Of a DNA stretch of 12,416 nucleotides, positions 1 to 12,416 are shown in pieces; the stretch's first letter is position 1, and each line of letters starts with the position of its first letter. The notes beneath the pieces are model-generated. The model was not told the DNA's origin, ran no database searches, and was given only the letters and a program-made list of their open reading frames with translations. The stretch is from Macrostomum lignano (lineage: Eukaryota), in the NCBI GenBank assembly GCA_002269645.1, contig NIVC01005266.1, forward strand, positions 1 to 12,416. Direction: 5' to 3'. The translations under genes and the position numbers were made by a program.

Positions 1-900
1 CAATGCATAAACTTGCGGGCCTCTTTAGCAGGCAGTGAACGTACAATGATATTTCAATGCTTTAAATCAGAAAGTTTCAAACGCAAACTGTTGCTCGAGT
101 TTTTAACTTTGAGAGAAAAAATTAATATTGCTGGAAAGAACTTGCAAAGCTGATTTCAGGGATATAAATTGTTTGCTTTAAATATGAAAAGAAAAAGCAC
201 AGCATTGAAAAAACTATTTCCATACTTTTAACTTTCTGCAAAAATTGTACTCAGTTTTGCGAGACGTAATAGATAAAGTTTGGGGAGGGTTCAACTTCTT
301 ACTGCTGCTGTGTATTGGAGGGTTGATTTAGATTGCGCAATGTTTTTCTTAACTTTAACTGAGACTGATACTGACTGACTGTGAAATCGGTTGCGCCATC
401 AATTGTTTTTATTATCTGTGCCTTTCAATAGGCTGCCCTGTGTAATAGCCAGCCTGTGTAATGAATGAATAAATTTGCGAGCCTCTTTGGCAGGCAGTGA
501 ACGTACACGCGATATTTCAATGCCTTAAAACGGGAAACTTTCAAACGCTAACTGCTCTTCGAGTTCTAAACTTTAAAGAAGATACTTATACTGCTGAAAG
601 ATCTTGCAACGCTGAGTTCGAGGATATAAATTGTTTGCTATAAATATAAAGACTAAAAGAGAGCATCAAAAAACTATTTCCATACTTTTAGCTTTATGCA
701 AAGATTGTACTCATTTTTTGTTCAATGCCCCCAACAGTTCGGCGTTCAATTTCTAACTGACTGCGTGTTGAAAAGGGGTCGGTCTCTGTGTACTGGAGGG
801 TTGATTTTTAGATTGCGCAATCTTTTTGTAACTTTAACTGAGACTGATACTGACTGACTGAGAAATCGGTTGCGCAATCAATTGATTCAATTGGTTCAAT
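1..900 (+). repeat. Two ~460-bp central subrepeats, U0 (second copy truncated)
   Basis: Anchor AA(C/T)TTGCG(A/G)GCCTCTTT..CAGGCAGTGAACGTACA at 10 and 472 (period 462). Confidence 0.92.
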
Positions 901-932
901 TTTTTATTTGAACACGCAGCTGTGTGTAGCTT

Positions 933-968
933 TAACCCTAACCCTAACCCTAACAATAACCCTAACCA
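933..968 (-). repeat. Short interstitial telomere-like tract (TTAGGG on the minus strand)
   Basis: (TAACCC)3 TAACAA TAACCC TAACCA on +. Confidence 0.93.
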
Positions 969-992
969 ATGAATCCTGATATTTATTTTTTT

Positions 993-1150
993 GACGGAGA
1001 AAATTTCGATTGAGTCCAGTTTAAAAGAGAGAATTTCGATGGTTTTCAGTTTCACGGAAAGGATTTCGAAGGAGTCCAGTTTCACGGAGAGGATTTCGAT
1101 GGTTTTCAGTTGCACGGACAGGATTTCTGCTTCGCGGAGAGGATCTTGAT
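993..1150 (+). repeat. 30-bp minisatellite (GGATTTCGATGGTTTTCAGTTTCACGGAGA) with a 20-bp short variant, U0
   Basis: Repeat starts at 1001, 1031, 1061, 1091, 1121 and 1141. Confidence 0.92.
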
Positions 1151-1173
1151 GGATTTGGCATCTTCAATCAGTC

Positions 1174-2178
1174 AGAGAAAAGAGTAAAGAGAAGAATGAA
1201 AGCAGAAGAGAGATGAGATGATAGAAAACAGAGTAGAAATAAGTGGAGATATTAGACATGACAGATTGGAGAGAAGAGGGATTTAGGCGGGAACGAAGAG
1301 GGAGAGAGAAGAAAAGAGGAGAGACGAGAGAAAATAGATTAGGGATAAGAGCGTACAGAGAAAATAGAAGAGAGGGGAGAGTAGAGGAGAAAGAAAGAGT
1401 GAGATGAGGGGATGAGGGATGAGAGAGGAGGGAGACAGGAGAGACAAGAAAGGAGAAAAGAGGGGAGAAAGGAGAAAGGAGAGAGTAGAGACGAAGGACC
1501 AGTTAGAAGATATAAATACGGTAGTAGAGATGAGAGGAGAGATAGGAGAGAGAAGCGAGAGAAGAAGCGAGAGGAGAAGAGAAAGAGGAGAGAGGAGAGA
1601 GATGAAATAGATAAGAGAGTTAAGAGAGGAGTAGTGAGGAGAGGAGAGATGAGAGATGCGATGATAAGAGATGAGTGAGAACATAAGAGAGAGAGAGAAG
1701 AGATTAGAGAAGAGAGGGGAGAAGATAAAAGGAGCAAGGGAGGAGAAAAGAGAGAATGGAGAGGATAGAAAAGAGAGAAGAGAAGAGACAGGGAAAAGTG
1801 GAAAGGAGGAAAGAAAGATTGGAGACAAGTAAGTGGAGTGTGAGAGCGTATATGAGATATGAGAAATGAGAGCAGAGAGGAAAGAAAAGAGAAGAGAGAG
1901 AGGGTTAAGAGAGACGATAGATAAGTGAATAGGGATGACATATAAAAGAGGAGAGAAGAGGGAGAGATAAGAGAGAAGAGAGAAGACAGGAGACAGAAGT
2001 GAAGAGGAGAGATATGAGAGAAGAGAGGAGACAAGAGACAGGAGAGGGTACAGACGAAAGACGAGGGAGAAAACATAAATAAGGGAGTACGGGTAGAGAT
2101 GAGATGAGAGAGAGGAGAGAGAAGAGAGTCACGATAATAGCACAGAGTGGAGAGAGTAGATATGAGAGACGTGAGAGT
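1174..2178 (+). repeat. GA-rich polypurine low-complexity tract, type X (U0)
   Basis: The + strand is almost all A/G; for example 55 of 60 bases are purine in 1561-1620. Confidence 0.95.
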
Positions 2179-2294
2179 CTTTGAGCTATGGTCTTTGAAA
2201 GGTTTTCTAAAGAATTTGGAGACGATTTGGAAGATAGGGTTCAAGACATGGAATTTCAGTTGATGGATATTTCAGGGAATGGAATTCCGGTGAT

Positions 2295-2406
2295 GGAGTT
2301 CTTCCCCTTTCTCCTCCGAAGGAGGAGTTCCACTCGTATATACTAAAGTTGACGCGTTGTTTGTCTGTCTGTCTGTGTCTGTCTGTCATTTCGACAACTC
2401 CTCCTT
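2295..2406 (+). other. Unit junction: 3' hairpin, TTT, 5' hairpin, and an 11-bp inverted repeat enclosing the microsatellite
   Basis: GGAGTTCTTCCCC (2295-2307), TTT (2308-2310), CTCCTCC-GAA-GGAGGAG (2311-2327). AAGGAGGAGTT (2319-2329) is the reverse complement of AACTCCTCCTT (2396-2406). Confidence 0.85.
2363..2387 (+). repeat. (GTCT)n microsatellite, U1
   Basis: GTCTGTCTGTCTGTGTCTGTCTGTC read directly. Confidence 0.95.
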
Positions 2407-2714
2407 GAATAGTGCAACTCAGCGTTGAAACTTATATGGGAAGATTGGAAATTATCCGAGGTCGGCTATAGGCTATTTTAATACTGAAATTTTAATTTCT
2501 AAGATCCTCAAAAAAGCAGAAAACTTGAATCTTGACCTTTGATAATCTTAATTGTCCCCTCTTTCTGCTTGGAGCTGAAAAAATGCATGAATTTTTAGTG
2601 ATTGCGCCACAACTTTTCCCTATCTCTGTAGTGTATTTTCTTTCCAGTGGGAGGTGGGAGCGTTCTCAGTGGCTGCGTGTGTACACTTGGACCCTAGCTA
2701 ACTGGCGACAGTGA

Positions 2715-3640
2715 AATTTAATGCATCAACTTGCGAGCCTCTTAGCAGGCAGTGAACGTACACTCGATATTTCAATGCTTTAAATCAAAGTTTCAAATGC
2801 TAACTGTTGCTCGATTTTTGAACTTTGAGAGGAGAGACTATATATTGCTGAAAGGTCTTGCAACGCTGAGTTCAGGGATATAAGTTGTTTGCTTTAACTG
2901 TAAAAATTAAAAGCATGCATTCAAAAACGATTTCATTACTTTTAATTTTAACTTGCTGCAAAGATTGTACTTATTTTTGCGATAGGTAGAGATAAATTTG
3001 GGGGGGTTCAATTGCTAATTGCCACTGCGTAGTGGAAGGCGGTCAGGGCGCTGTGTATTAGACGGCTGATTTAGATTGCGCAATGTTTTTTCTTAACTTT
3101 AACTGAGACTGATTCTGACTGACTGTGAAATCGGTTGCGCCATCAATTTGTTTTATTATCTGTGCCTTTCAATTAGGCTGCCCTGTGTAGTAGCCGGCCT
3201 GTGTAATGAATGAGACAAACTTGCGAGCCTCTTTGGCAGGCAGGAACGTACACTCGATGGTTCAATGCTTTAAAACGGGAACTTTCAAACGCTAACTGCT
3301 CTTCGAGTTCTAAACTTTGAAAGAAGAGACTTATCTGCTGAAAAGATCTTGCAACACTGAGTTCGAGGATATAAATTGTTTGCTTTAAATATAAAGACTA
3401 AAGCACAGCATACAAAAACTATTTCCATACTTTTAGCTTTCTGCAAAGATTGTACTCATTTTTAGTTCATGCCCCCAACCCCGGGTTCAATTTCTAACTG
3501 CCACTGCGTATTGAAAAGGGGTCGGTCACTGTGTACTGGAGGGTTGATTTAAATTGCGCAATCTTTTTTAACTTTAACTGAGACTGATACTGACTGACTG
3601 TGAAATCGGTTGCGCAATCAATTGATTCAATTGTTCAATT
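2715..3640 (+). repeat. Two ~490-bp central subrepeats, U1
   Basis: Anchor AACTTGC at 2728 and 3218 (period 490). Confidence 0.92.
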
Positions 3641-3671
3641 TTTTATTTGGACACGCAGCTGTGTGTAGCTC

Positions 3672-3707
3672 TAACCCTAACCCTAACCCTAACAATAACC
3701 CTAAACC
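3672..3707 (-). repeat. Short interstitial telomere-like tract
   Basis: (TAACCC)3 TAACAA TAACCC TAAACC on +. Confidence 0.93.
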
Positions 3708-3734
3708 AATGAATCCTGATATTTTATTCTTTTT

Positions 3735-3910
3735 GACGGAGAAAATTTCGATTGAGTCCAGTTTAAAAGAGAGAATTTCGATGGTTTTCAGTTTCACGAG
3801 AGGATTTCTGTTTTGCGGAGAGGATTTCGATGGTATTTCAGTTTCACGAAGAGGATGTCGATGGTTTTCAGTTGCACAGACAAGATTTCTGCTTCGCGGA
3901 GAGGATCTTG
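3735..3910 (+). repeat. 30/20-bp minisatellite, U1
   Basis: Same consensus; order long-long-short-long-long-short. Confidence 0.9.
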
Positions 3911-3970
3911 ATGGATTTAAGATGGATTTTAAGATGGATTTTAAGATGGATGGATTAAAGATAGATTTGA
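3910..3970 (+). repeat. 12-bp repeat (GATGGATTTTAA)n, specific to U1/U3
   Basis: GATGGATTTAA GATGGATTTTAA GATGGATTTTAA GATG GATGGATTAAA GATAGATTTGA. Confidence 0.9.
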
Positions 3971-4500
3971 GATAATAAGAGAGAGAATAGATGAGGGATA
4001 AGAGCATCCAGAGGAATAGAAGAGAGGGAGTGTAGAGAGAACAAAAGAGTGAGATGGGGGATGAGAAATGAGAGAGGAGGGGAGAGAGAAGAGAGGAGAA
4101 AAGAGGGAGAAAGGAGACAGGAGAGAGTACAGAGAGAAAGACCAGGGAGAAGATTTAAATAAGGTAGTAGAGATGAGAGGAGAGAGAGGAGAGAGAAGCG
4201 AAAGGAGAAGAAAGAGAGGAGAGCGGAGAGAGATGAAAGATCAGAGATAAGAGAGTGTAGAGAGGAAAGTAGTGAGGAGAGGAGAGATGAGAGATGCGAT
4301 AAAAAGAGATGAGTGAGAACATAAGAGAGAAGAGATTAGAGATTAGAGAAGAGAGGGGAGAAGATGACAGGAGCAATGAAGAGGATAGAAAAGAGAGAAG
4401 AGAAGAGACAGGGGATAGTGGAAAGGAGTAAAGAAGGATATGAGACAAGAAAGTAGAGTGTGAGAGCGTATATGAGATATGAGAAATGAGAGCAGAGAGG

Positions 4501-4532
<32 letters not shown>

Positions 4533-4804
4533 GGTTAAGAGAGACGATAGATAAGTGAGTAGAGATGACATATGAGAGAGGAGAGAAGAGGAGAGATAAG
4601 AGAGAAGAGAGGAGACAAGAGACAGAAGTGAAGAGGAGAGATATGAGAGAAGAGAGGAGACAAGAGACAGGAGAGGTACAGACGAAAGACGAGGGAGAAG
4701 ACATAAATAAGGAAGTAGGGGTAGAGATGAGATGAGAGAGAGGAGAGAGAAGAGAGTCACGATAATAACAAAGAGAGGAGAGAGGAGATATGAGAGACAT
4801 GAAA
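3960..4804 (+). repeat. GA-rich polypurine tract, type Y (U1)
   Basis: Homologous to type X from GATAAGAGC onward. Confidence 0.95.
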
Positions 4805-4922
4805 GTCTTTGAGCTATGGTCTTTAAAAGGTTTTGCAAAAAATTTGGAGAAGATTTGGAAGATAGGGTTCAAGACATGGAATTTCAGTTGATGGATATTT
4901 CAGGAAATGGAATTCCGGTGAT

Positions 4923-5057
4923 GGAAGTTCTTCCCCTTTCACCTCCGAAGGAGGAGTTCCACTCGTATATACTAAAGTTGACGCGTTGTTTGTCTGTCTG
5001 TATGTCTGTCTGTATGTCTGTCTGTATGTCTGTCTGTCATTTCGACAACTCCTCCTT
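4923..5057 (+). other. Unit junction (U1/U2)
   Basis: GGAAG-TT-CTTCC (4923-4934), TTT (4937-4939), CACCTCC-GAA-GGAGGAG (4940-4956, one mismatch), inverted repeat 4948-4958 / 5047-5057. Confidence 0.85.
4992..5038 (+). repeat. (GTCTGTCTGTAT)3 + GTCTGTCTGTC microsatellite, U2
   Basis: 12-bp period read directly. Confidence 0.95.
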
Positions 5058-5355
5058 GAATAGTGCCAACTCAGCGTTGAAACTTATATGGGAAGATTGG
5101 AAATTATCCGAGGTCGGCTATAGGCTATTTTAATTCTGAAATTTTAATTTCTAAGATCCTCAAAAAAGCAGAAAACTTGAATCTTGACCTTTGATAATCC
5201 TAATTGTCCCCTCTTTCTGCTTGGAGCTGAAAAATGCATGAATTTTTAGTGATTGCGCCACAACTTTTCCCTATCTCTGTAGTGTATTTTCTTTCCAGTG
5301 GGGGTTGGGAGCGTTCTCAGTGGCTGCGTGTGTACACTTGGACCCTGGCTCACTG

Positions 5356-5865
5356 GCTGACTGTATAGATAATTGCGCAATGATATGGCTACTGATAAGT
5401 TTTCCTGCCTTTCAATGGGCAGCCCTGTGTATTTGTTGGACATTGAAATTCAATGCATCAACTTGCAAGCAGGCAGTCAACGTACACTCGATACTTCAAT
5501 GCAATAAATCAGACAGTTTTAAACGCTAACTGTTCCTCGAGTTTTAAACTTTGATAGGAGAAACTGATATTGCTGGAAAGATCTTGCAACGCTGAGTTCG
5601 GGGATATAAGTTGTTTGCTTTAAATATGAAAAGAAAAAGCACAGCATTTGAAAAACTATTTCCATACTTTTAACTTGCTGCAAAGATTGTACTCAGTTTT
5701 GCGAGACGTAATAGATAAATCTGGGGGGAGGGTTCAACTTCTCACTGCTGCTGTGTATTGGAGGGTTGATTTAGATTGCGCAATGCTTTTGTTAACTTTA
5801 ACTGAGACTGATACTGACTGACTGTGAAATCGGTTGCGCAATGAATTGATTCAATTAGTTCAATC
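5356..5865 (+). repeat. One central subrepeat plus a ~90-bp remnant of a preceding copy, U2
   Basis: Anchor at 5460. The upstream CTGACTGT..TTGCGCAAT..GCCTTTCAAT..GCCCTGTGTA resembles the subrepeat 3' end. Confidence 0.88.
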
Positions 5866-5898
5866 AGTTGTCTTTTAACACGATGCTGTGCGTAGTTC

Positions 5899-5922
5899 TA
5901 ACCCTAACCCTAACCCTAACCA
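5899..5922 (-). repeat. Short interstitial telomere-like tract
   Basis: (TAACCC)3 TAACCA on +. Confidence 0.92.
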
Positions 5923-5947
5923 ATGAATCCGGAGAGTTGAGTTGTTT

Positions 5948-6120
5948 GACGGAAAAAATTCGATTAAGTCCAGTTTAGCGGACGATTTCAATGTTTTAAT
6001 TTTGACGGAGAGGATTTCTGTTTCGTGGAGAGGATTTCGATGGTGTTCAGTTTCACGGAGAGGATTTCGATGGTTTTCAGTTGCACGGACAGGATTTCTG
6101 CTTTGCGGAGAGGATCTTGA
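5948..6120 (+). repeat. 30/20-bp minisatellite, U2
   Basis: Same consensus; the first two units are degenerate. Confidence 0.9.
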
Positions 6121-6144
6121 TAGATTTGGCATCTTCAATTAGTC

Positions 6145-7153
6145 AGAGAAGAGAGTAAAGAGAAGAATGAAAAGAGAAGAGAGATGAGATGATAGAAAAC
6201 AGAGTAGAAATGAGTGGAGAGATTAGACATGACAGATGGGAGAGAAGAGGGGATTTAGGCGGGAACGAAGAGGGAGAGAGAAGAAAAGAGGAGAGACGAG
6301 AGAAAATAGATTAGTGATAAGAGCGTACAGAGAAAATAGAAGAGAGGGGAGAGTAGAGGAGAAAGAAAGAGTGAGATGAGGGGATGAGGGATGAGAGAGG
6401 AGGGGAGACAGGAGAGACAAGAAAGGAGAAAAGAGGGGAGAAAGGAGAAAGGAGAGAGTAGAGACGAAGGACCAGTTAGAAGATATAAATACGGTAGTAG
6501 AGATGAGAGGAGAGATAGGAGAGAGAAGCGAGAGAAGAAGCGAGAGGAGAAGAGAAAGAGGAGAGAGGAGAGAGATGAAATAGATAAGAGAGTTAAGAGA
6601 GGAGAGTAGTGAGGAGAGGAGAGATGAGAGATGCGATGATAAGAGATGAGTGAGAACATAAGAGAGAAGAGAGAAGAGATTAGAGAAGAGAGGGGAGAAG
6701 ATAAAAGGAGCAAGGGGAGGAGAAAAGAGAGAATGGAGAGGATAGAAAAGAGAGAAGAGAAGAGACAGGGAAAAGTGGAAAGGAGGAAAGAAAGATTGGA
6801 GACAAGTAAGTGGAGTGTGAGAGCGTATATGAGATATGAGAAATGAGAGCAGAGAGGAAAGAAAAGAGAAGAGAGAGAGGGTTAAGAGAGACGATAGATA
6901 AGTGAATAGGGATGACATATAAAAGAGGAGAGAAGAGGGAGAGATAAGAGAGAAGAGAGAAGACAGGAGACAGAAGTGAAAAGGAGAGATATGAGAGAAG
7001 AGAGGAGACAAGAGACAGGAGAGGGTACAGACGAAAGACGAGGGAGAAAACATAAATAAGGGAGTACGGGTAGAGATGAGATGAGAGAGAGGAGAGAGAA
7101 GAGAGTCACGATAATAGCACAGAGTGGAGAGAGTAGATATGAGAGACGTGAGA
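6145..7153 (+). repeat. GA-rich polypurine tract, type X (U2)
   Basis: Near-identical to 1282-2178 after position 6253. Confidence 0.95.
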
Positions 7154-7271
7154 GTCTTTGAGCTATGGTCTTTGAAAGGTTTTCTAAAGAATTTGGAGAC
7201 GATTTGGAAGATAGGGTTCAAGACATGGAATTTCAGTTGATGGATATTTCAGGGAATGGAATTCCGGTGAT

Positions 7272-7380
7272 GGGAGTTCTTCCCCTTTCTCCTCCGAAGG
7301 AGGAGTTCCACTCGTAAATATACTAAAGTTGACGCGTTGTTTGTCTGTCTGTGTGTCTGTCATTTCGACAACTCCTCCTT
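7272..7380 (+). other. Unit junction (U2/U3)
   Basis: GGGAGTTCTTCCC (7272-7284), TTT (7286-7288), hairpin 7289-7305, inverted repeat 7297-7307 / 7370-7380. Confidence 0.85.
7343..7361 (+). repeat. Short GTCT/GT microsatellite, U3
   Basis: GTCTGTCTGTGTGTCTGTC read directly. Confidence 0.9.
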
Positions 7381-7689
7381 GAATAGTGGCAACTCAGCGT
7401 TGAAACTTATATGGGAAGATTGGAAATTATCCGAGGTCGGCTATAGGCTATTTTAATACTGAAATTTTAATTTCTAAGATCCTCAAAAAAGCAGAAAACT
7501 TGAATCTTGACCTTTGATAATCTTAATTGTCCCCTCTTTCTGCTTGGAGCTGAAAAAATGCATGAATTTTTAGTGATTGCGCCACAACTTTTCCCTATCT
7601 CTGTAGTGTATTTTCTTTCCAGTGGGAGGTGGGAGCGTTCTCAGTGGCTGCGTGTGTACACTTGGACCCTAGCTAACTGGCGGACAGTG

Positions 7690-8625
7690 AAATTCAATGC
7701 ATCAACTTGCGAGCCTCTTTAGCAGGCAGTGAACGTACACTCGATATTTCAATGCTTTAAATCAAAAAGTTTCAAATGCTAACTGTTGCTCGATTTTTGA
7801 ACTTTGAGAGGAGAGACTTATATTGCTGAAAAGGTCTTGCAACGCTGAGTTCAGGGATATAAGTTGTTTGCTTTAACTGTAAAAATTAAAAGCACATCAT
7901 TCAAAAAACGATTTCATTACTTTTAATTTTAACTTGCTGCAAAGATTGTACTTATTTTTGCGATAGGTCAGAGATAAATTTGGGGGGGTTCAATTGCTAA
8001 TTGCCACTGCGTAGTGGAAGGCGGTCAGGCGCTGTGTATTAGACGGCTGATTTAGATTGCGCAATGTTTTTCTTAACTTTAACTGAGACTGATTCTGACT
8101 GACTGTGAAATCGGTTGCGCCATCAATTTGTTTTATTATCTGTGCCTTTCAATAGGCTGCCCTGTGTAGTAGCCGGCCTGTGTAATGAATGAACAAACTT
8201 GCGAGCCTCTTTGGCAGGCAGTGAACGTACACTCGATGGTTCAATGCTTTAAAACGGGAACTTTCAAACGCTAACTGCTCTTCGAGTTCTAAACTTTAAG
8301 AGAAGAGACTTATGCTGCTGAAAAGATCTTGCAACACTGAGTTCGAGGATATAAATTGTTTGCTTTAAATATAAAGACTAAAAGCACAGCATACAAAAAC
8401 TATTTCCATACTTTTAGCTTTCTGCAAAGATTGTACTCATTTTTAGTTCAATGCCCCCAACACCCGGGTTCAATTTCTAACTGCCACTGCGTATTGAAAA
8501 GGGGTCGGTCACTGTGTACTGGAGGGTTGATTTAAATTGCGCAATCTTTTTTAACTTTAACTGAGACTGATACTGACTGACTGTGAAATCGGTTGCGCAA
8601 TCAATTGATTCAATTGGTTCAATTT
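7690..8625 (+). repeat. Two ~490-bp central subrepeats, U3
   Basis: Anchor at 7704 and 8196 (period 492). Confidence 0.92.
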
Positions 8626-8655
8626 TTTATTTGGACACGCAGCTGTGTGTAGCTC

Positions 8656-8691
8656 TAACCCTAACCCTAACCCTAACAATAACCCTAACCA
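8656..8691 (-). repeat. Short interstitial telomere-like tract
   Basis: (TAACCC)3 TAACAA TAACCC TAACCA on +. Confidence 0.93.
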
Positions 8692-8717
8692 ATGAATCCT
8701 GATATTTTATTCTTTTT

Positions 8718-8892
8718 GACGGAGAAAATTTCGATTGAGTCCAGTTTAAAAGAGAGAATTTCGATGGTTTTCAGTTTCACGAAGAGGATTTCTGTTTTGC
8801 GGAGAGGATTTCGATGGTATTCAGTTTCACGAAGAGGATGTCGATGGTTTTCAGTTGCACAGACAAGATTTCTGCTTCGCGGAGAGGATCTT
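8718..8892 (+). repeat. 30/20-bp minisatellite, U3
   Basis: Matches U1. Confidence 0.9.
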
Positions 8893-8953
8893 GATGGATT
8901 TAAGATGGATTTTAAGATGGATTTTAAGATGGATGGATTTAAGATAGATTTGA
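8893..8953 (+). repeat. 12-bp repeat (GATGGATTTTAA)n, U3
   Basis: Matches U1. Confidence 0.9.
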
Positions 8954-9486
8954 GATAATAAGAGAGAGAATAGATGAGGGATAAGAGCATCCAGAGGAAA
9001 TAGAAGAGAGGGGAGTGTAGAGGAGAACAAAAGAGTGAGATGGGGGATGAGAAATGAGAGAGGAGGGGAGAGAGAAGAGAGGAGAAAAGAGGGGAGAAAG
9101 GAGACAGGAGAGAGTACAGAAGAAAGACCAGGGAGAAGATTTAAATAAGGTAGTAGAGATGAGAGGAGAGAGAGGAGAGAGAAGCGAAAGGAGAAGAAAG
9201 AGAGGAGAGCGGAGAGAGATGAAAGATCAGAGATAAGAGAGTGTAGAGAGGAAAGTAGTGAGGAGAGGAGAGATGAGAGATGCGATAAAAAGAGATGAGT
9301 GAGAACATAAGAGAGAAGAGATTAGAGATTAGAGAAGAGAGGGGAGAAGATGACAGGAGCAATGAAGAGGATAGAAAAGAGAGAAGAGAAGAGACAGGGG
9401 ATAGTGGAAAGGAGTAAAGAAGGATATGAGACAAGAAAGTAGAGTGTGAGAGCGTATATGAGATATGAGAAATGAGAGCAGAGAGG

Positions 9487-9518
<32 letters not shown>

Positions 9519-9792
9519 GGTTAAGAGAGACGATAGATAAGTGAGTAGAGATGACATATGAGAGAGGAGAGAAGAAGGAGAGATAAGAGAGAAGAGAGGA
9601 GACAAGAGACAGAAGTGAAGAGGAGAGATATGAGAGAAGAGAGGAGACAAGAGACAGGAGAGGGTACAGACGAAAGACGAGGGAGAAGACATAAATAAGG
9701 AAGTAGGGGTAGAGATGAGATGAGAGAGAGGAGAGAGAAGAGAGTCACGATAATAACAAAGAGAGGAGAGAGGAGATATGAGAGACATGAAA
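8943..9792 (+). repeat. GA-rich polypurine tract, type Y (U3)
   Basis: Near-identical to 3960-4804. Confidence 0.95.
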
Positions 9793-9910
9793 GTCTTTGA
9801 GCTATGGTCTTTAAAAGGTTTTGCAAAAAAATTGGAGAAGATTTGGAAGATAGGGTTCAAGACATGGAATTTCAGTTGATGGATATTTCAGGAAATGGAA
9901 TTCCGGTGAT

Positions 9911-10045
9911 GGAAGTTCTTCCCCTTTCACCTCCGAAGGAGGAGTTCCACTCGTATATACTAAAGTTGACGCGTTGTTTGTCTGTCTGTATGTCTGTCTG
10001 TATGTCTGTCTGTATGTCTGTCTGTCATTTCGACAACTCCTCCTT
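9911..10045 (+). other. Unit junction (U3/U4)
   Basis: GGAAG-TT-CTTCC (9911-9922), TTT (9925-9927), hairpin 9928-9944, inverted repeat 9936-9946 / 10035-10045. Confidence 0.85.
9980..10026 (+). repeat. (GTCTGTCTGTAT)3 + GTCTGTCTGTC microsatellite, U4
   Basis: Same allele as U2. Confidence 0.95.
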
Positions 10046-10341
10046 GAATAGTGCCAACTCAGCGTTGAAACTTATATGGGAAGATTGGAAATTATCCGAG
10101 GTCGCTATAGGCTATTTTAATTCTGAAATTTTAATTTCTAAGATCCTCAAAAAAGCAGAAAACTTGAATCTTGACCTTTGATAATCCTAATTGTCCCCTC
10201 TTTCTGCTTGGAGCTGAAAAATGCATGAATTTTTAGTGATTGCGCCACAACTTTTCCCTATCTCTGTAGTGTATTTTCTTTCCAGTGGGGTTGGGAGAGT
10301 TCTCAGTGGCTGCGTGTGTACACTTGGACCCTGGCTCACTG

Positions 10342-10850
10342 GCTGACTGTATAGATAATTGCGCAATGATATGGCTACTGATAAGTTTTCCTGCCTTTCA
10401 ATGGGCAGCCCTGTGTATTTGTTGGACATTGAATTCAATGCATCAACTTGCAAGCAGGCAGTCAACGTACACTCGATACTTCAATGCAATAAATCAGACA
10501 GTTTTAAACGCTAACTGTTCCTCGAGTTTTAAACTTTGATAGGAGAAACTGATATTGCTGGAAAGATCTTGCAACGCTGAGTTCGGGGATATAAGTTGTT
10601 TGCTTTAAATATGAAAAGAAAAAGCACAGCATTTGAAAAACTATTTCCATACTTTTAACTTGCTGCAAAGATTGTACTCAGTTTTGCGAGACGTAATAGA
10701 TAAATCTGGGGAGGGTTCAACTTCTCACTGCTGCTGTGTATTGGAGGGTTGATTTAGATTGCGCAATGCTTTTGTTAACTTTAACTGAGACTGATACTGA
10801 CTGACTGTGAAAATCGGTTGCGCAATGAATTGATTCAATTAGTTCAATCA
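10342..10850 (+). repeat. One central subrepeat plus remnant, U4
   Basis: Anchor at 10445; matches U2. Confidence 0.88.
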
Positions 10851-10882
10851 GTTGTCTTTTAACACGATGCTGTGCGTAGTTC

Positions 10883-10904
10883 TAACCCTAACCCTAACCT
10901 ACCA
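10883..10904 (-). repeat. Short interstitial telomere-like tract
   Basis: (TAACCC)2 TAACCT ACCA on +. Confidence 0.88.
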
Positions 10905-10930
10905 ATGAATCCGGAGAGTTGAAGTTGTTT

Positions 10931-11103
10931 GACGGAAAAAATTCGATTAAGTCCAGTTTAGCGAGAGACGATTTCAATGTTTTAATTTTGACGGAGAGGA
11001 TTTCTGTTTCGTGGAGAGGATTTCGATGGTGTTCAGTTTCACGGAGAGGATTTCGATGGTTTCAGTTGCACGGACAGGATTTCTGCTTTGCGGAGAGGAT
11101 CTT
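10931..11103 (+). repeat. 30/20-bp minisatellite, U4
   Basis: Matches U2. Confidence 0.9.
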
Positions 11104-11129
11104 GATAGATTTGGCATCTTCAATTAGTC

Positions 11130-11960
11130 AGAGAAGAGAGTAAAGAGAAGAATGAAAAGAGAAGAGAGATGAGATGATAGAAAACAGAGTAGAAATGAGT
11201 GGAGAGATTAGACATGACAGATGGGAGAGAAGAGGGAGTAAGGCGGAACGAAGGAGAGAGAAGAGAAGAGGAGAGAGGAGATGAAGGAAGAGGATATGAG
11301 AGAGAAGATATGAGATAGAAGAGAGGAGACAGGACAGAGAAGAAAAGAGGGATAAGAGCGCACAGAGGCAATAGAAGAGAGGAAAGAGAGGAGAGAGGTG
11401 AGAGTTGAGAGGAGAGAGATGAAATCAGAGATCAGAGATTTGAGAGAAGAAAGTAGTGAGGAGAAAGAAGAGGGTAAAGATGAGAGTGCAGAGAGGAGAG
11501 AAACGAGAGGAGACAGGTGGTAGAAAGGAGTGTAAAAACAGGAGATAAAAAGGAGAGAGGAGAGTGAGAGCATATAGGAAAGTGTAAAAGGGGAGCAGAG
11601 TAGAGAGAATAGATAAGTGAGTAGAGAAGAGATATGAGAGAGGAGAGACGAGGGGAGAGAGGAGACAGGAGAGAGTAAATTTGAAGACCTGGAGAAGAGA
11701 TAAATAAGATAGTACAGATGAGAGGAGAGAGATGAGAGATGCAAATAGAAAAGAGATAAGTGAGAAAAGAGAGAGAGAGAGATTTGAGAAGAGAGGGGAA
11801 AAGATGAGAGGAGAAAGGAAAGGGGAGAAGAAAAAATGGAGAGGAGAGAAAAGAAGGTGACAAGAGACGGTAGTAAGGAGGGCAGAAAGATGGAAGATAA
11901 GAAAGGAGAGGGTGATATGAAAGATATGAGATATGAGAAATGAGAGCAGAGACATGAGAG
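11130..11960 (+). repeat. GA-rich polypurine tract, type Z (U4), divergent
   Basis: Shares motifs with X and Y, but in a different order. Confidence 0.93.
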
Positions 11961-12087
11961 TCCGAGTCTGGACAATGCCAGTGAGTTTTGCAAATAGGGA
12001 AAAAGATATCCGGTAATTGAAATGCATTGTAGAGGATTTGGAGATGATTTGGAAGATGGGATTCAAGTCATGGAATTTCAGCCTGAT

Positions 12088-12243
12088 GGGAAGTTCTTCC
12101 CCTTCAGAATTCCAGTGATGGGAGTTCTTCCCTTTCTCCTCCAGAGGAGGAGTTCCACTCGTATATATACTAAAGTTGACGTGTTGTTTGTCTGTCTGTC
12201 TGTGTGTGTGTGTGTGTGTGTGTCATTTCGACAACTCCTCCTT
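12088..12243 (+). other. Unit junction (U4/U5), divergent variant
   Basis: GGGAAG-TT-CTTCCC (12088-12101), GGGAGTTCTTCCC (12120-12132), TTT, CTCCTCC-AGA-GGAGGAG (12136-12152), AACTCCTCCTT (12233-12243). Confidence 0.85.
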
Positions 12244-12416
12244 GAATAGTGGCAACTCAGCGTTGAAACTTATATGGAGATTGGAAATTATCCGAAGGTC
12301 GGCTATAGGCTATTTTAATTCTGAAATTTTAATTTCTAAGATCCTCAAAAAAGCAGAAACGGCGGTCTTGACCTTTGATAATCTTAATTGTCCCCTCTCT
12401 GCTTGGAGCTGAAAAT
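12133..12416 (+). mobile_element. Unit U5 (3'-truncated by the window); start of the conserved core
   Basis: TTT-CTCCTCC-AGA-GGAGGAG (12133-12152), GTCT/GT microsatellite, and core sequence matching the other units. Confidence 0.45.
12190..12224 (+). repeat. (GTCT)3 followed by (GT)n microsatellite, U5
   Basis: Read directly. Confidence 0.95.

What the first reader, a model, noticed from the sequence alone, without database searches (positions are those of the whole stretch)
6239..6253. U2 is a chimera: the breakpoint of a ~4.98 kb duplication maps to about 15 bp at the start of the purine tract
Seen: at seven consecutive diagnostic sites U2 equals U4 and differs from U0. These are GCTTTGCGG vs GCTTCGCGG, GATAGATTT vs GATGGATTT, CAATTAG vs CAATCAG, GAAGAGAGT vs GAAAAGAGT, GAAAAGAG vs GAAAGCAG, ATGAGTGGAGAGATT vs ATAAGTGGAGATATT, and AGATGGG vs AGATTGG (last at 6238). 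From 6254 (TTTAGGCGGG vs GTAAGGCGG) U2 equals U0 and differs from U4. Inference: the ancestral order was U0-U1-U4-U5. One unequal crossover between U0 (1268-1281) and U4 (11224-11237) duplicated about 4.98 kb, creating U2 and U3. The apparent dimeric higher-order repeat is thus a single event caught early.
Basis: partly seen in the sequence, partly recalled or inferred. Interest (0 to 1): 0.7.

Follow-up and report, generated by a model that had tools for sequence, protein, structure and literature searches.

The report
Recent 5-kb tandem duplication junction
A non-coding array of roughly 2.3 to 2.7 kb repeats contains one very recent, in-register 5-kb tandem duplication whose junction maps to 15 bases; this is a clean but ordinary example of how tandem arrays grow.

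Summary
In a three-way alignment of U0, U2 and U4, U2 matches U4 at every reliable site up to 6238. It matches U0 from 6254 onwards (53:1 against 2:325 substitution sites, Fisher p = 2.5e-61).

The switch lies in GGAGAGAAGAGGG(G)A at 6239-6253. The parental sites are 1268-1281 and 11224-11237.

Two adjacent blocks, 1282-6238 and 6254-11223, are 99.7% identical at aligned bases. The independent monomers U0, U1 and U4 are only 69-93% alike. Near-identity stops on both outer sides at the homologous position, so there are exactly two copies and not a longer higher-order repeat.

U0 resembles U1 on both sides of the breakpoint and U4 is distant on both sides. Only U2 is inconsistent, which makes U2 the hybrid.

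A single homology-guided, in-register duplication is therefore the best reading. Crossover and break-induced replication cannot be told apart.

Caveats:
- The breakpoint lies about 110 nt inside the purine-rich tract, not at its first base.
- The copies differ mainly by 1-bp indels (44 indel events against about 10 substitution events). This looks like long-read consensus error, so a false duplication made by the assembler is not excluded.
- No relatives and no source organism were found.

This is a known kind of event, of low to moderate interest.

The parts
6239..6253 (+). Breakpoint interval in the hybrid monomer U2: GGAGAGAAGAGGGGA. It is identical to both parental sites apart from one private extra G.
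   Evidence: The last U2=U4 site is 6238 and the first U2=U0 site is 6254.
1268..1281 (+). Parental site in U0 and left edge of duplicate copy 1 (GGAGAGAAGAGGGA).
   Evidence: It is a 14-nt block identical between U0 and U4, ranked 21st longest of 419 identical blocks.
11224..11237 (+). Parental site in U4 and right edge of duplicate copy 2.
1282..6238 (+). Duplicate copy 1 (right part of U0 + U1 + left part of U2), 4957 nt.
   Evidence: It is 99.68% identical to copy 2 at aligned bases. The copies differ by 44 indel events and about 10 substitution events.
6254..11223 (+). Duplicate copy 2 (right part of U2 + U3 + left part of U4), 4970 nt.
1..1267 (+). Left flank (left part of U0), not part of the recent duplication. 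It is 85% identical to the left parts of U2 and U4 and carries one extra ~480-nt subrepeat.
11238..12416 (+). Right flank (right part of U4), not part of the recent duplication. It is 71% identical to the right parts of U0 and U2. Its purine tract is essentially unalignable (55-65%).
1045..1281 (+). Block of 91-95% identity between U0 and U4 (U4: 11002-11237). The exchange took place at its right edge. The part from about 1157 to 1325 is present in U0, U2 and U4 and absent from U1 and U3.
6128..7154 (+). Purine-rich tract of U2 (86% A+G on the + strand). Equivalent tracts are at 1162-2177, 3943-4808, 8941-9796 and 11113-11962.
5438..7694 (+). Hybrid monomer U2 in my phase. The other monomers are U0 1-2719, U1 2720-5437, U3 7695-10423 and U4 10424-12416 (cut by the window end).

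Best explanation
The window is a non-coding, eukaryote-like array of large tandem repeats (a 'macrosatellite'). Each monomer of about 2.26-2.72 kb contains:
- one or two ~480-nt subrepeats;
- a short (CTAACC)3-4 telomere-like run;
- 30-nt repeats;
- a purine-rich tract of about 0.85-1.0 kb;
- a conserved tail of about 0.6 kb.

The older order was U0-U1-U4. These three monomers are 69-93% alike.

One homology-guided exchange between misaligned copies joined the left part of U4 to the right part of U0. The misalignment was between sister chromatids or homologues, shifted by two monomers. The exchange occurred inside a 14-nt identical block, at the right edge of a ~240-nt stretch of 91-95% identity.

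This duplicated 4.97-4.98 kb in register. It created the hybrid monomer U2 and a second copy of U1, which is U3. The event is very recent, with at most 0.3% substitution divergence and probably less.

What is shown: the topology, the exact two-copy state, the breakpoint interval and the polarity. What is inferred: that the exchange was an unequal crossover. I put about 0.5 on classical unequal crossover or sister-chromatid exchange. I put about 0.3 on one-ended repair (break-induced replication or template switching) after a fork problem in the adjacent purine tract.
For: - There is a single clean switch of parentage at 6239-6253, p = 2.5e-61.
- Differences per 250 nt between the window and itself shifted by about 4.97 kb fall from 43-155 to 0-13 between 1251 and 6250, then rise to 106-139.
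- Monomer identity matrix: U2-U4 99.5% on the left; U0-U2 99.8% on the right; U1-U3 99.3-99.9%; independent pairs 69-93%. U0 is near U1 on both sides, U4 is far on both sides and U2 is inconsistent.
- The junction is in register and lies in a shared identical block within the 91-95% homology stretch 1045-1281.
- No tRNA, Rfam family or credible ORF is present. The long ORFs are read-throughs of the purine/pyrimidine tract.
- Hybrid monomers and junctions of about 20 nt are well documented in alpha satellite and other satellites (PMC9248890; PMC3694981, which cites Warburton et al. 1993).
Against: - The two copies differ by 44 indel events, 36 of them single bases and 18 of those in runs of two bases or fewer. 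They differ by only about 10 substitution events. Natural divergence is normally dominated by substitutions. The sequence therefore carries about 0.5% consensus error per copy, and its repeat copy number deserves less trust.
- No read, depth or population data could be consulted.
- U0 and U4 have a second stretch that is at least as similar: 2298-2572 against 12124-12406, at 94-98%. Homology alone does not explain why the exchange used this site.
- No reciprocal deletion product or second individual was seen, so crossover and replication-based repair cannot be separated.
Confidence: 0.75

Rival explanations
1. Assembly artefact. The true locus is U0-U1-U4. A noisy long-read assembler traversed a false loop by overlapping U4 with U0 in their 91-95% identical stretch. 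The 4.97-kb block was therefore written twice.
For: - Differences between the copies are mostly 1-bp indels, many outside homopolymers. This is what two independent consensus passes over one locus would give.
- Paralogous monomers (85-95% alike near the junction) fall within the identity range of raw long reads.
- An overlap-based misjoin would also be in register.
Against: - A 5-kb period is easily spanned by ordinary long reads.
- Several differences look like real mutations rather than random error. They are a 6-nt (TGTC)n slippage at 2370-2375, a 3-nt AGA indel at 10964-10966, a complex change at 2916-2922 and a change in the telomere-like run at 5916-5918.
- There is no gap, run of N or disorder at the junction.
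Confidence: 0.13
2. The duplication is the same and is real, but it was made by replication-based repair and not by a reciprocal crossover. A fork stalled or broke at triplex-prone purine/pyrimidine DNA just to the right of 11237 in U4. The free 3' end then invaded the homologous block of U0 on the sister chromatid, and synthesis resumed from 1282.
For: - The breakpoint sits in the last 14 nt of the homology block, directly beside the hypervariable purine tract.
- Pure purine runs of 30-32 nt start 13-14 nt to the right of each parental site, at 1295-1324 and 11250-11281.
- A mirror repeat with 13-nt arms lies at 11252-11279.
- H-DNA formed by homopurine mirror repeats stalls polymerases and causes instability (PMC11667243, abstract seen).
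- An equally good homology block elsewhere was not used.
Against: - This is one event only. The chance of landing in the last 14 nt of a 237-nt block is about 6%, which is not compelling.
- Mirror repeats of this size occur 26 times across the tracts, so proximity is expected.
- The tracts are interrupted by about 14% pyrimidines, so the triplex potential is modest.
- The extra G at the junction is no more than the background 1-bp indel rate predicts. For a change private to U2, that is about 6-7% per 15 nt.
Confidence: 0.3
3. Long gene conversion. Six diverged monomers already existed, and about 4.97 kb (right part of U2, U3, left part of U4) was overwritten by the block two monomers upstream.
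For: It would yield the same pattern of identity.
Against: The converted tract would have to start and end at homologous positions, so that its length equals the shift (4972-4984 nt) to within about 15 nt. For an arbitrary tract this is a coincidence of less than 1%. Conversion tracts of 5 kb are also unusually long.
Confidence: 0.03
4. Established dimeric higher-order repeat, with the window sampling 2.5 units of a long homogeneous array.
For: - The ~170-nt block 1157-1325 is present in U0, U2 and U4 and absent from U1 and U3. This hints at an older A/B alternation.
- The period is about 4.97-4.98 kb.
Against: - Near-identity stops on both sides inside the window. The left part of U0 is 85% identical to the left part of U2, and the right part of U4 is 71% identical to the right part of U2. 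The homogeneous block therefore has exactly two copies.
- U0 is closer to U1 than to U4 over most of its length, which is the opposite of a dimeric repeat.
Confidence: 0.03

Closest known systems
Hybrid monomers and birth of higher-order repeats in alpha satellite and other satellite DNAs (Warburton, Waye and Willard 1993; HORmon, PMC9248890; Meloidogyne satellites, PMC3694981)
   Same: A repeat unit made of the prefix of one monomer and the suffix of another. It arises by an in-register exchange between misaligned monomers. The junction can be localised to about 15-20 nt, and the multi-monomer block is then present in near-identical copies.
   Different: - The monomers here are 2.3-2.7 kb, not 171 nt.
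- They are internally composite: subrepeats, a telomere-like run and a purine tract.
- Only two copies of the block exist, so this is the two-copy stage and not an array.
- No centromere context is known.
Non-allelic homologous recombination products with hybrid units, such as the anti-Lepore haemoglobin duplication and the red/green opsin gene arrays (textbook knowledge, not tested here)
   Same: The duplication product of an unequal exchange between tandem paralogues carries a hybrid unit at the junction, flanked by both intact parents.
   Different: Those cases involve genes and have known reciprocal deletion alleles. Here the units are non-coding and no reciprocal product has been seen.
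Macrosatellites such as D4Z4 (review PMC8122249) and subtelomeric tandem elements separated by short telomeric runs, such as yeast Y' elements (from memory, a lead only)
   Same: Kilobase-scale tandem units. Copy number changes by unequal exchange. Each unit here carries a short (TTAGGG)-type run on the minus strand, as do Y' arrays.
   Different: There is no sequence similarity to any known macrosatellite, no ORF and an unknown chromosomal position. The monomers are far more diverged (69-93%) than in homogenised macrosatellites.
Instability driven by H-DNA or GAA-type purine tracts (review PMC11667243)
   Same: The breakpoint abuts long purine/pyrimidine DNA with runs of 30-49 nt and short mirror repeats.
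   Different: The tracts are imperfect (about 86% purine). There is no experimental evidence of triplex formation or fork stalling, and only a single event.

Membership tests
Tandem duplication by unequal homologous exchange | Two directly adjacent copies that are much more alike than other paralogous units in the array | tested here: met
   1282-6238 against 6254-11223 is 99.68% identical at aligned bases. Independent monomers are 69-93% alike.
Tandem duplication by unequal homologous exchange | The junction unit is a hybrid of the two flanking parental units, with one switch point, in register | tested here: met
   53:1 against 2:325 informative sites on either side of 6239-6253.
Tandem duplication by unequal homologous exchange | The switch lies within sequence shared by both parents, meaning real homology and not bare microhomology | tested here: met
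   A 14-nt identical block at the edge of a 237-nt stretch of 91-95% identity.
Tandem duplication by unequal homologous exchange | Both parental units persist on the outer sides of the duplication | tested here: met
   The left part of U0 and the right part of U4 are distinct from the corresponding parts of U2.
Tandem duplication by unequal homologous exchange | Reciprocal deletion allele or length polymorphism in the population; physical reality of both copies | not testable with these tools
   No reads, no other individuals and no source organism were found.
Higher-order repeat satellite | A multi-monomer unit repeated many times with high identity between units | tested here: not met
   There are exactly two copies. 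Identity collapses at 1267 on the left and at 11238 on the right.
Higher-order repeat satellite | Monomers at the same position in different units are closer than neighbouring monomers | tested here: inconclusive
   This holds only for the recent pair. For the independent monomers, U0 is closer to U1 than to U4. However, a 170-nt block is shared by U0 and U4 and is missing in U1.
Subtelomeric repeat array | Short telomere-type runs inside or between the units | tested here: met
   (CTAACC)3-4 at 933-950, 3671-3688, 5898-5921, 8655-8672 and 10882-10899.
Subtelomeric repeat array | Location next to a chromosome end | not testable with these tools
   The window has no terminal telomere array and no flanking sequence was available.
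Rearrangement driven by H-DNA or a purine tract | A homopurine mirror repeat able to form a triplex at the breakpoint, more than expected by position alone | tested here: inconclusive
   A mirror repeat at 11252-11279 lies 15 nt from the parental site, but 26 such repeats are spread across the tracts.

The most novel reading that the evidence does not exclude
The array is a subtelomeric macrosatellite in which the purine/pyrimidine tract of each unit acts as a replication barrier or break site. Under this reading, copy-number changes start preferentially at the tract edge by one-ended, recombination-dependent replication. The window would then show the first step of higher-order repeat formation by a structure-driven hotspot, and not by random unequal crossover.
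Probability: 0.15. Interest if true: 0.5.

Novelty: new member of a known kind. Interest (0 to 1): 0.25.

Why it matters
If the duplication is real, the locus is a tidy natural example of a tandem array caught at the two-copy stage. Both parental monomers still flank the hybrid, and the junction is resolved to 15 nt. That is useful as a teaching case or as a marker: it predicts a 5-kb length polymorphism.

With many more events, it could also help test whether purine tracts bias where arrays recombine.

It changes no current view. Unequal exchange, hybrid monomers and the resulting higher-order periodicity have been established since the 1970s to 1990s, and they are seen by the thousand in telomere-to-telomere assemblies.

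The practical lesson for the scan is different. The indel-dominated differences flag a sequence with noticeable long-read consensus error. Copy number in this region should be verified before any biological use.

Tried and rejected
(1) Scans of metagenome contigs and genome contigs with the 17-mer GGAGAGGATTTCGATGG. The pattern was too short for collections of this size. BLAST of the fetched loci available to the script (three locus files) against the window gave only 22-23-nt or low-complexity matches, so the hits are chance.

(2) A 28-mer scan of viral contigs found nothing. A blastn of 4760-6140 against plasmids found nothing.

(3) Four exact-protein look-ups for window ORFs, meant to recover the source contig and its flanks, found nothing on record.

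(4) A protein homology search with the only ORF that is not low-complexity (9804-10181) gave no hit at E <= 0.001. I ran no further search on ORFs that are almost certainly spurious.

(6) Rfam and tRNA searches found nothing.

(7) Transposon-mediated tandem insertion was rejected. The boundaries of the duplicated block are homologous positions of paralogous monomers, and the junction is in register. An insertion would not produce that.

(8) Microhomology-only joining was rejected, because the 14-nt identity sits inside 237 nt of 91-95% homology.

(9) I considered the extra G at 6249-6252 as a junction scar. It is no more than the background 1-bp indel rate predicts.

Full report
**What the window is**

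The 12,416-nt window is non-coding, repetitive DNA. Tandem Repeats Finder, self-BLAST and the repeat finder show kilobase-scale direct repeats with offsets of about 2.2-2.7 kb. The best self-match, offset by 4,965 nt, is 786-6417 against 5751-11396 at 96.6%.

In the phase I use, the monomers are:
- U0: 1-2719
- U1: 2720-5437
- U2: 5438-7694
- U3: 7695-10423
- U4: 10424-12416, cut by the window end

Each monomer has:
- one ~480-nt subrepeat (U2, U4) or two (U0, U1, U3);
- a short (CTAACC)3-4 run, which is the vertebrate/fungal type of telomere hexamer read on the C-strand;
- two to five ~30-nt repeats with the consensus TTTCACGGAGAGGATTTCGATGG;
- a tract of 0.85-1.0 kb that is 85-86% purine on the + strand (1162-2177, 3943-4808, 6128-7154, 8941-9796, 11113-11962);
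- a tail of about 0.6 kb containing a (TGTC)n microsatellite.

There is no Rfam family, no tRNA and no credible gene. The long ORFs are minus-strand read-throughs of the pyrimidine tract. The only ORF that is not low-complexity has no homologue.

I read this as a eukaryotic macrosatellite, possibly subtelomeric. The organism could not be identified.

**Checking the observation**

I aligned the three in-register segments: A = 1-2470, B = 4966-7450 and C = 9954-12416.

Every run of variable columns to the left of B position 6238 has B = C and differs from A. Every run to the right of 6254 has A = B and differs from C. The totals are 472 and 597 columns. Only 14 columns are private to B, and a handful of isolated singletons go the other way.

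The interval between the last left site and the first right site is GGAGAGAAGAGGGGA (6239-6253). U0 (1268-1281) and U4 (11224-11237) both read GGAGAGAAGAGGGA there.

With substitution-only informative sites between 5751 and 7450, the 2x2 table is 53:1 against 2:325, Fisher p = 2.5e-61. It is still significant within +/-100 nt, at 6:0 against 1:25, p = 8e-6.

**Extent and copy number of the duplicated block**

I compared the window with itself shifted by about 4.97 kb and counted differing columns per 250 nt:
- 43-155 for positions 1-1250;
- 0-13 for positions 1251-6250;
- 106-139 from position 6251 onwards.

The near-identical pair is therefore 1282-6238 (4,957 nt) and 6254-11223 (4,970 nt). 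It is 99.68% identical at aligned bases, or 98.5% if gap columns are counted.

Identity collapses on both outer sides at the position homologous to the junction. The block therefore exists in exactly two copies. The units immediately outside are not further copies.

**Which unit is the hybrid**

The monomer identity matrix, split at the breakpoint, gives:

| Pair | Left of breakpoint | Right of breakpoint |
|---|---|---|
| U0-U1 | 89% | 93% |
| U0-U4 | 85% | 71% |
| U1-U4 | 80% | 69% |
| U2-U4 | 99.5% | 71.2% |
| U0-U2 | 85.5% | 99.8% |
| U1-U3 | 99.3% | 99.9% |

U0 is close to U1 on both sides and U4 is distant on both sides. Only U2 changes allegiance.

A 5-kb gene conversion could produce the same identity pattern. 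It would, however, need a tract whose length equals the shift to within about 15 nt. A duplication gives this automatically and a conversion gives it only by coincidence.

**Where the exchange happened**

In-register identity between U0 and U4 peaks at 91-95% over 1045-1281 (11002-11237 in U4). It falls to 50-65% in the purine tract.

The breakpoint block is the last 14-nt identical block at the right edge of this stretch. It ranks 21st of 419 identical blocks by length. The longest, 37 nt, is at 1204-1240.

The purine-rich zone begins about 110 nt to the left of the breakpoint. The exchange lies at the boundary between the conserved first ~110 nt of the tract and its hypervariable remainder.

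A second stretch of U0/U4 homology, 2298-2572 against 12124-12406, is at least as good at 94-98%. Homology alone does not single out the site that was used.

Pure purine runs of 30-32 nt begin 13-14 nt to the right of each parental site. A 13-nt-arm mirror repeat lies at 11252-11279.

This fits an event triggered by a fork problem or break in triplex-prone DNA (H-DNA review PMC11667243). But such motifs occur 26 times across the tracts. The position at the block edge has only about a 6% chance value, and there is only one event. I therefore treat a break-induced or template-switch origin as a live alternative (about 0.3) to classical unequal crossover (about 0.5). Both fall within an overall 0.75-0.8 that a real, single, homology-guided duplication occurred.

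**A warning about sequence quality**

The two copies differ by 44 indel events. Of these, 36 are single bases, and 18 of those lie in runs of two bases or fewer. They differ by only about 10 substitution events.

Real divergence is normally dominated by substitutions. This spectrum is typical of residual long-read consensus error, at roughly 0.5% per copy.

Two consequences follow. True divergence is at most 0.2-0.3% and perhaps near zero, so the event is very recent. Also, a false duplication by the assembler, looping through the 91-95% identical U0/U4 stretch, cannot be excluded from sequence alone. I give that 0.13.

Some differences argue mildly for real, separately evolving copies:
- a 6-nt (TGTC)n slippage at 2370-2375;
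- an AGA indel at 10964-10966;
- a complex change at 2916-2922;
- a change in the telomere-like run at 5916-5918.

The private extra G in the breakpoint block is within the background indel rate and should not be read as a repair scar.

**Comparison with what is known**

Hybrid monomers, each the prefix of one monomer joined to the suffix of another, are catalogued in human alpha satellite. There they are regarded as recent innovations (PMC9248890).

Satellite junctions of about 20 nt, and non-random recombination sites, were described by Warburton et al. 1993, as cited in PMC3694981.

The duplication product of unequal exchange between tandem paralogues, with a hybrid unit flanked by both parents, is textbook knowledge (anti-Lepore, opsin arrays).

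The present case meets every testable defining feature of such a duplication. It fails the defining feature of a higher-order repeat array, which is many copies.

One detail hints at older structure. The ~170-nt block that carries the breakpoint (U0 1157-1325) is present in U0, U2 and U4 and is replaced in U1 and U3 by (GATGGATTTTAA)n. An ancient A/B alternation is therefore possible. With three independent monomers it cannot be established.

**Verdict**

It is a new example of a well-known process: neat, but not surprising to a specialist. Interest is 0.25.

The most novel reading still open is a structure-driven hotspot at the purine-tract edge in a subtelomeric macrosatellite. I rate it at about 0.15 probability and 0.5 interest if true.

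Noticed in passing
window 1282-6238 against 6254-11223: The differences between the two copies are dominated by single-base indels (36 of 54 events), many outside homopolymers. This is the signature of residual long-read consensus error, so the whole window is probably about 99.5% accurate.
   Followed up: yes
window 933-950, 3671-3688, 5898-5921, 8655-8672, 10882-10899: Every monomer carries a short (CTAACC)3-4 telomere-type run, with the G-strand on the minus strand pointing to the left of the window. This recalls subtelomeric tandem elements separated by telomeric runs. U0, U1 and U3 have an extra degenerate repeat (TAACAATAACCCT) that is missing in U2 and U4.
   Followed up: partly
window 1157-1325, 6128-6297 and 11113-11280, against 3918-3979 and 8901-8961: A ~170-nt block, which carries the breakpoint, is present in U0, U2 and U4. 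In U1 and U3 it is replaced by 12-nt repeats (GATGGATTTTAA)n. This is possibly a trace of an older alternation of two monomer types.
   Followed up: partly
window 1-940, 2720-3630, 5438-5850, 7695-8610, 10424-10835: There is a ~480-nt subrepeat, about 80-84% alike between copies. It is present twice in U0, U1 and U3 and once in U2 and U4. This accounts for the 2.72-kb and 2.26-kb monomer lengths.
   Followed up: partly
window 11238-11962 against 1282-2177 and 3979-4808: The purine tract of U4 is essentially unalignable with those of U0 and U1 (55-65% identity). The tracts of U0 and U1 are 83-97% alike, and the 3' tails of all three are 94-100% alike. The tract therefore turns over much faster than the rest of the unit, or the tail is homogenised or constrained.
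   Followed up: partly
window 2355-2383, 4987-5038, 7335-7357, 9975-10026, 12181-12223: A (TGTC)n/(TG)n microsatellite sits in the tail of each monomer. It differs by 6 nt between the two recent copies, at 2370-2375. This is one of the few differences that looks like a real mutation.
   Followed up: partly
window 4816-5133 and 9804-10181 (+): An ATG-started ORF of 105-125 aa that is not low-complexity recurs in the tails of U1 and U3 and is truncated in U0 and U2. It has no homologue in the protein collection, so it is probably spurious.
   Followed up: yes
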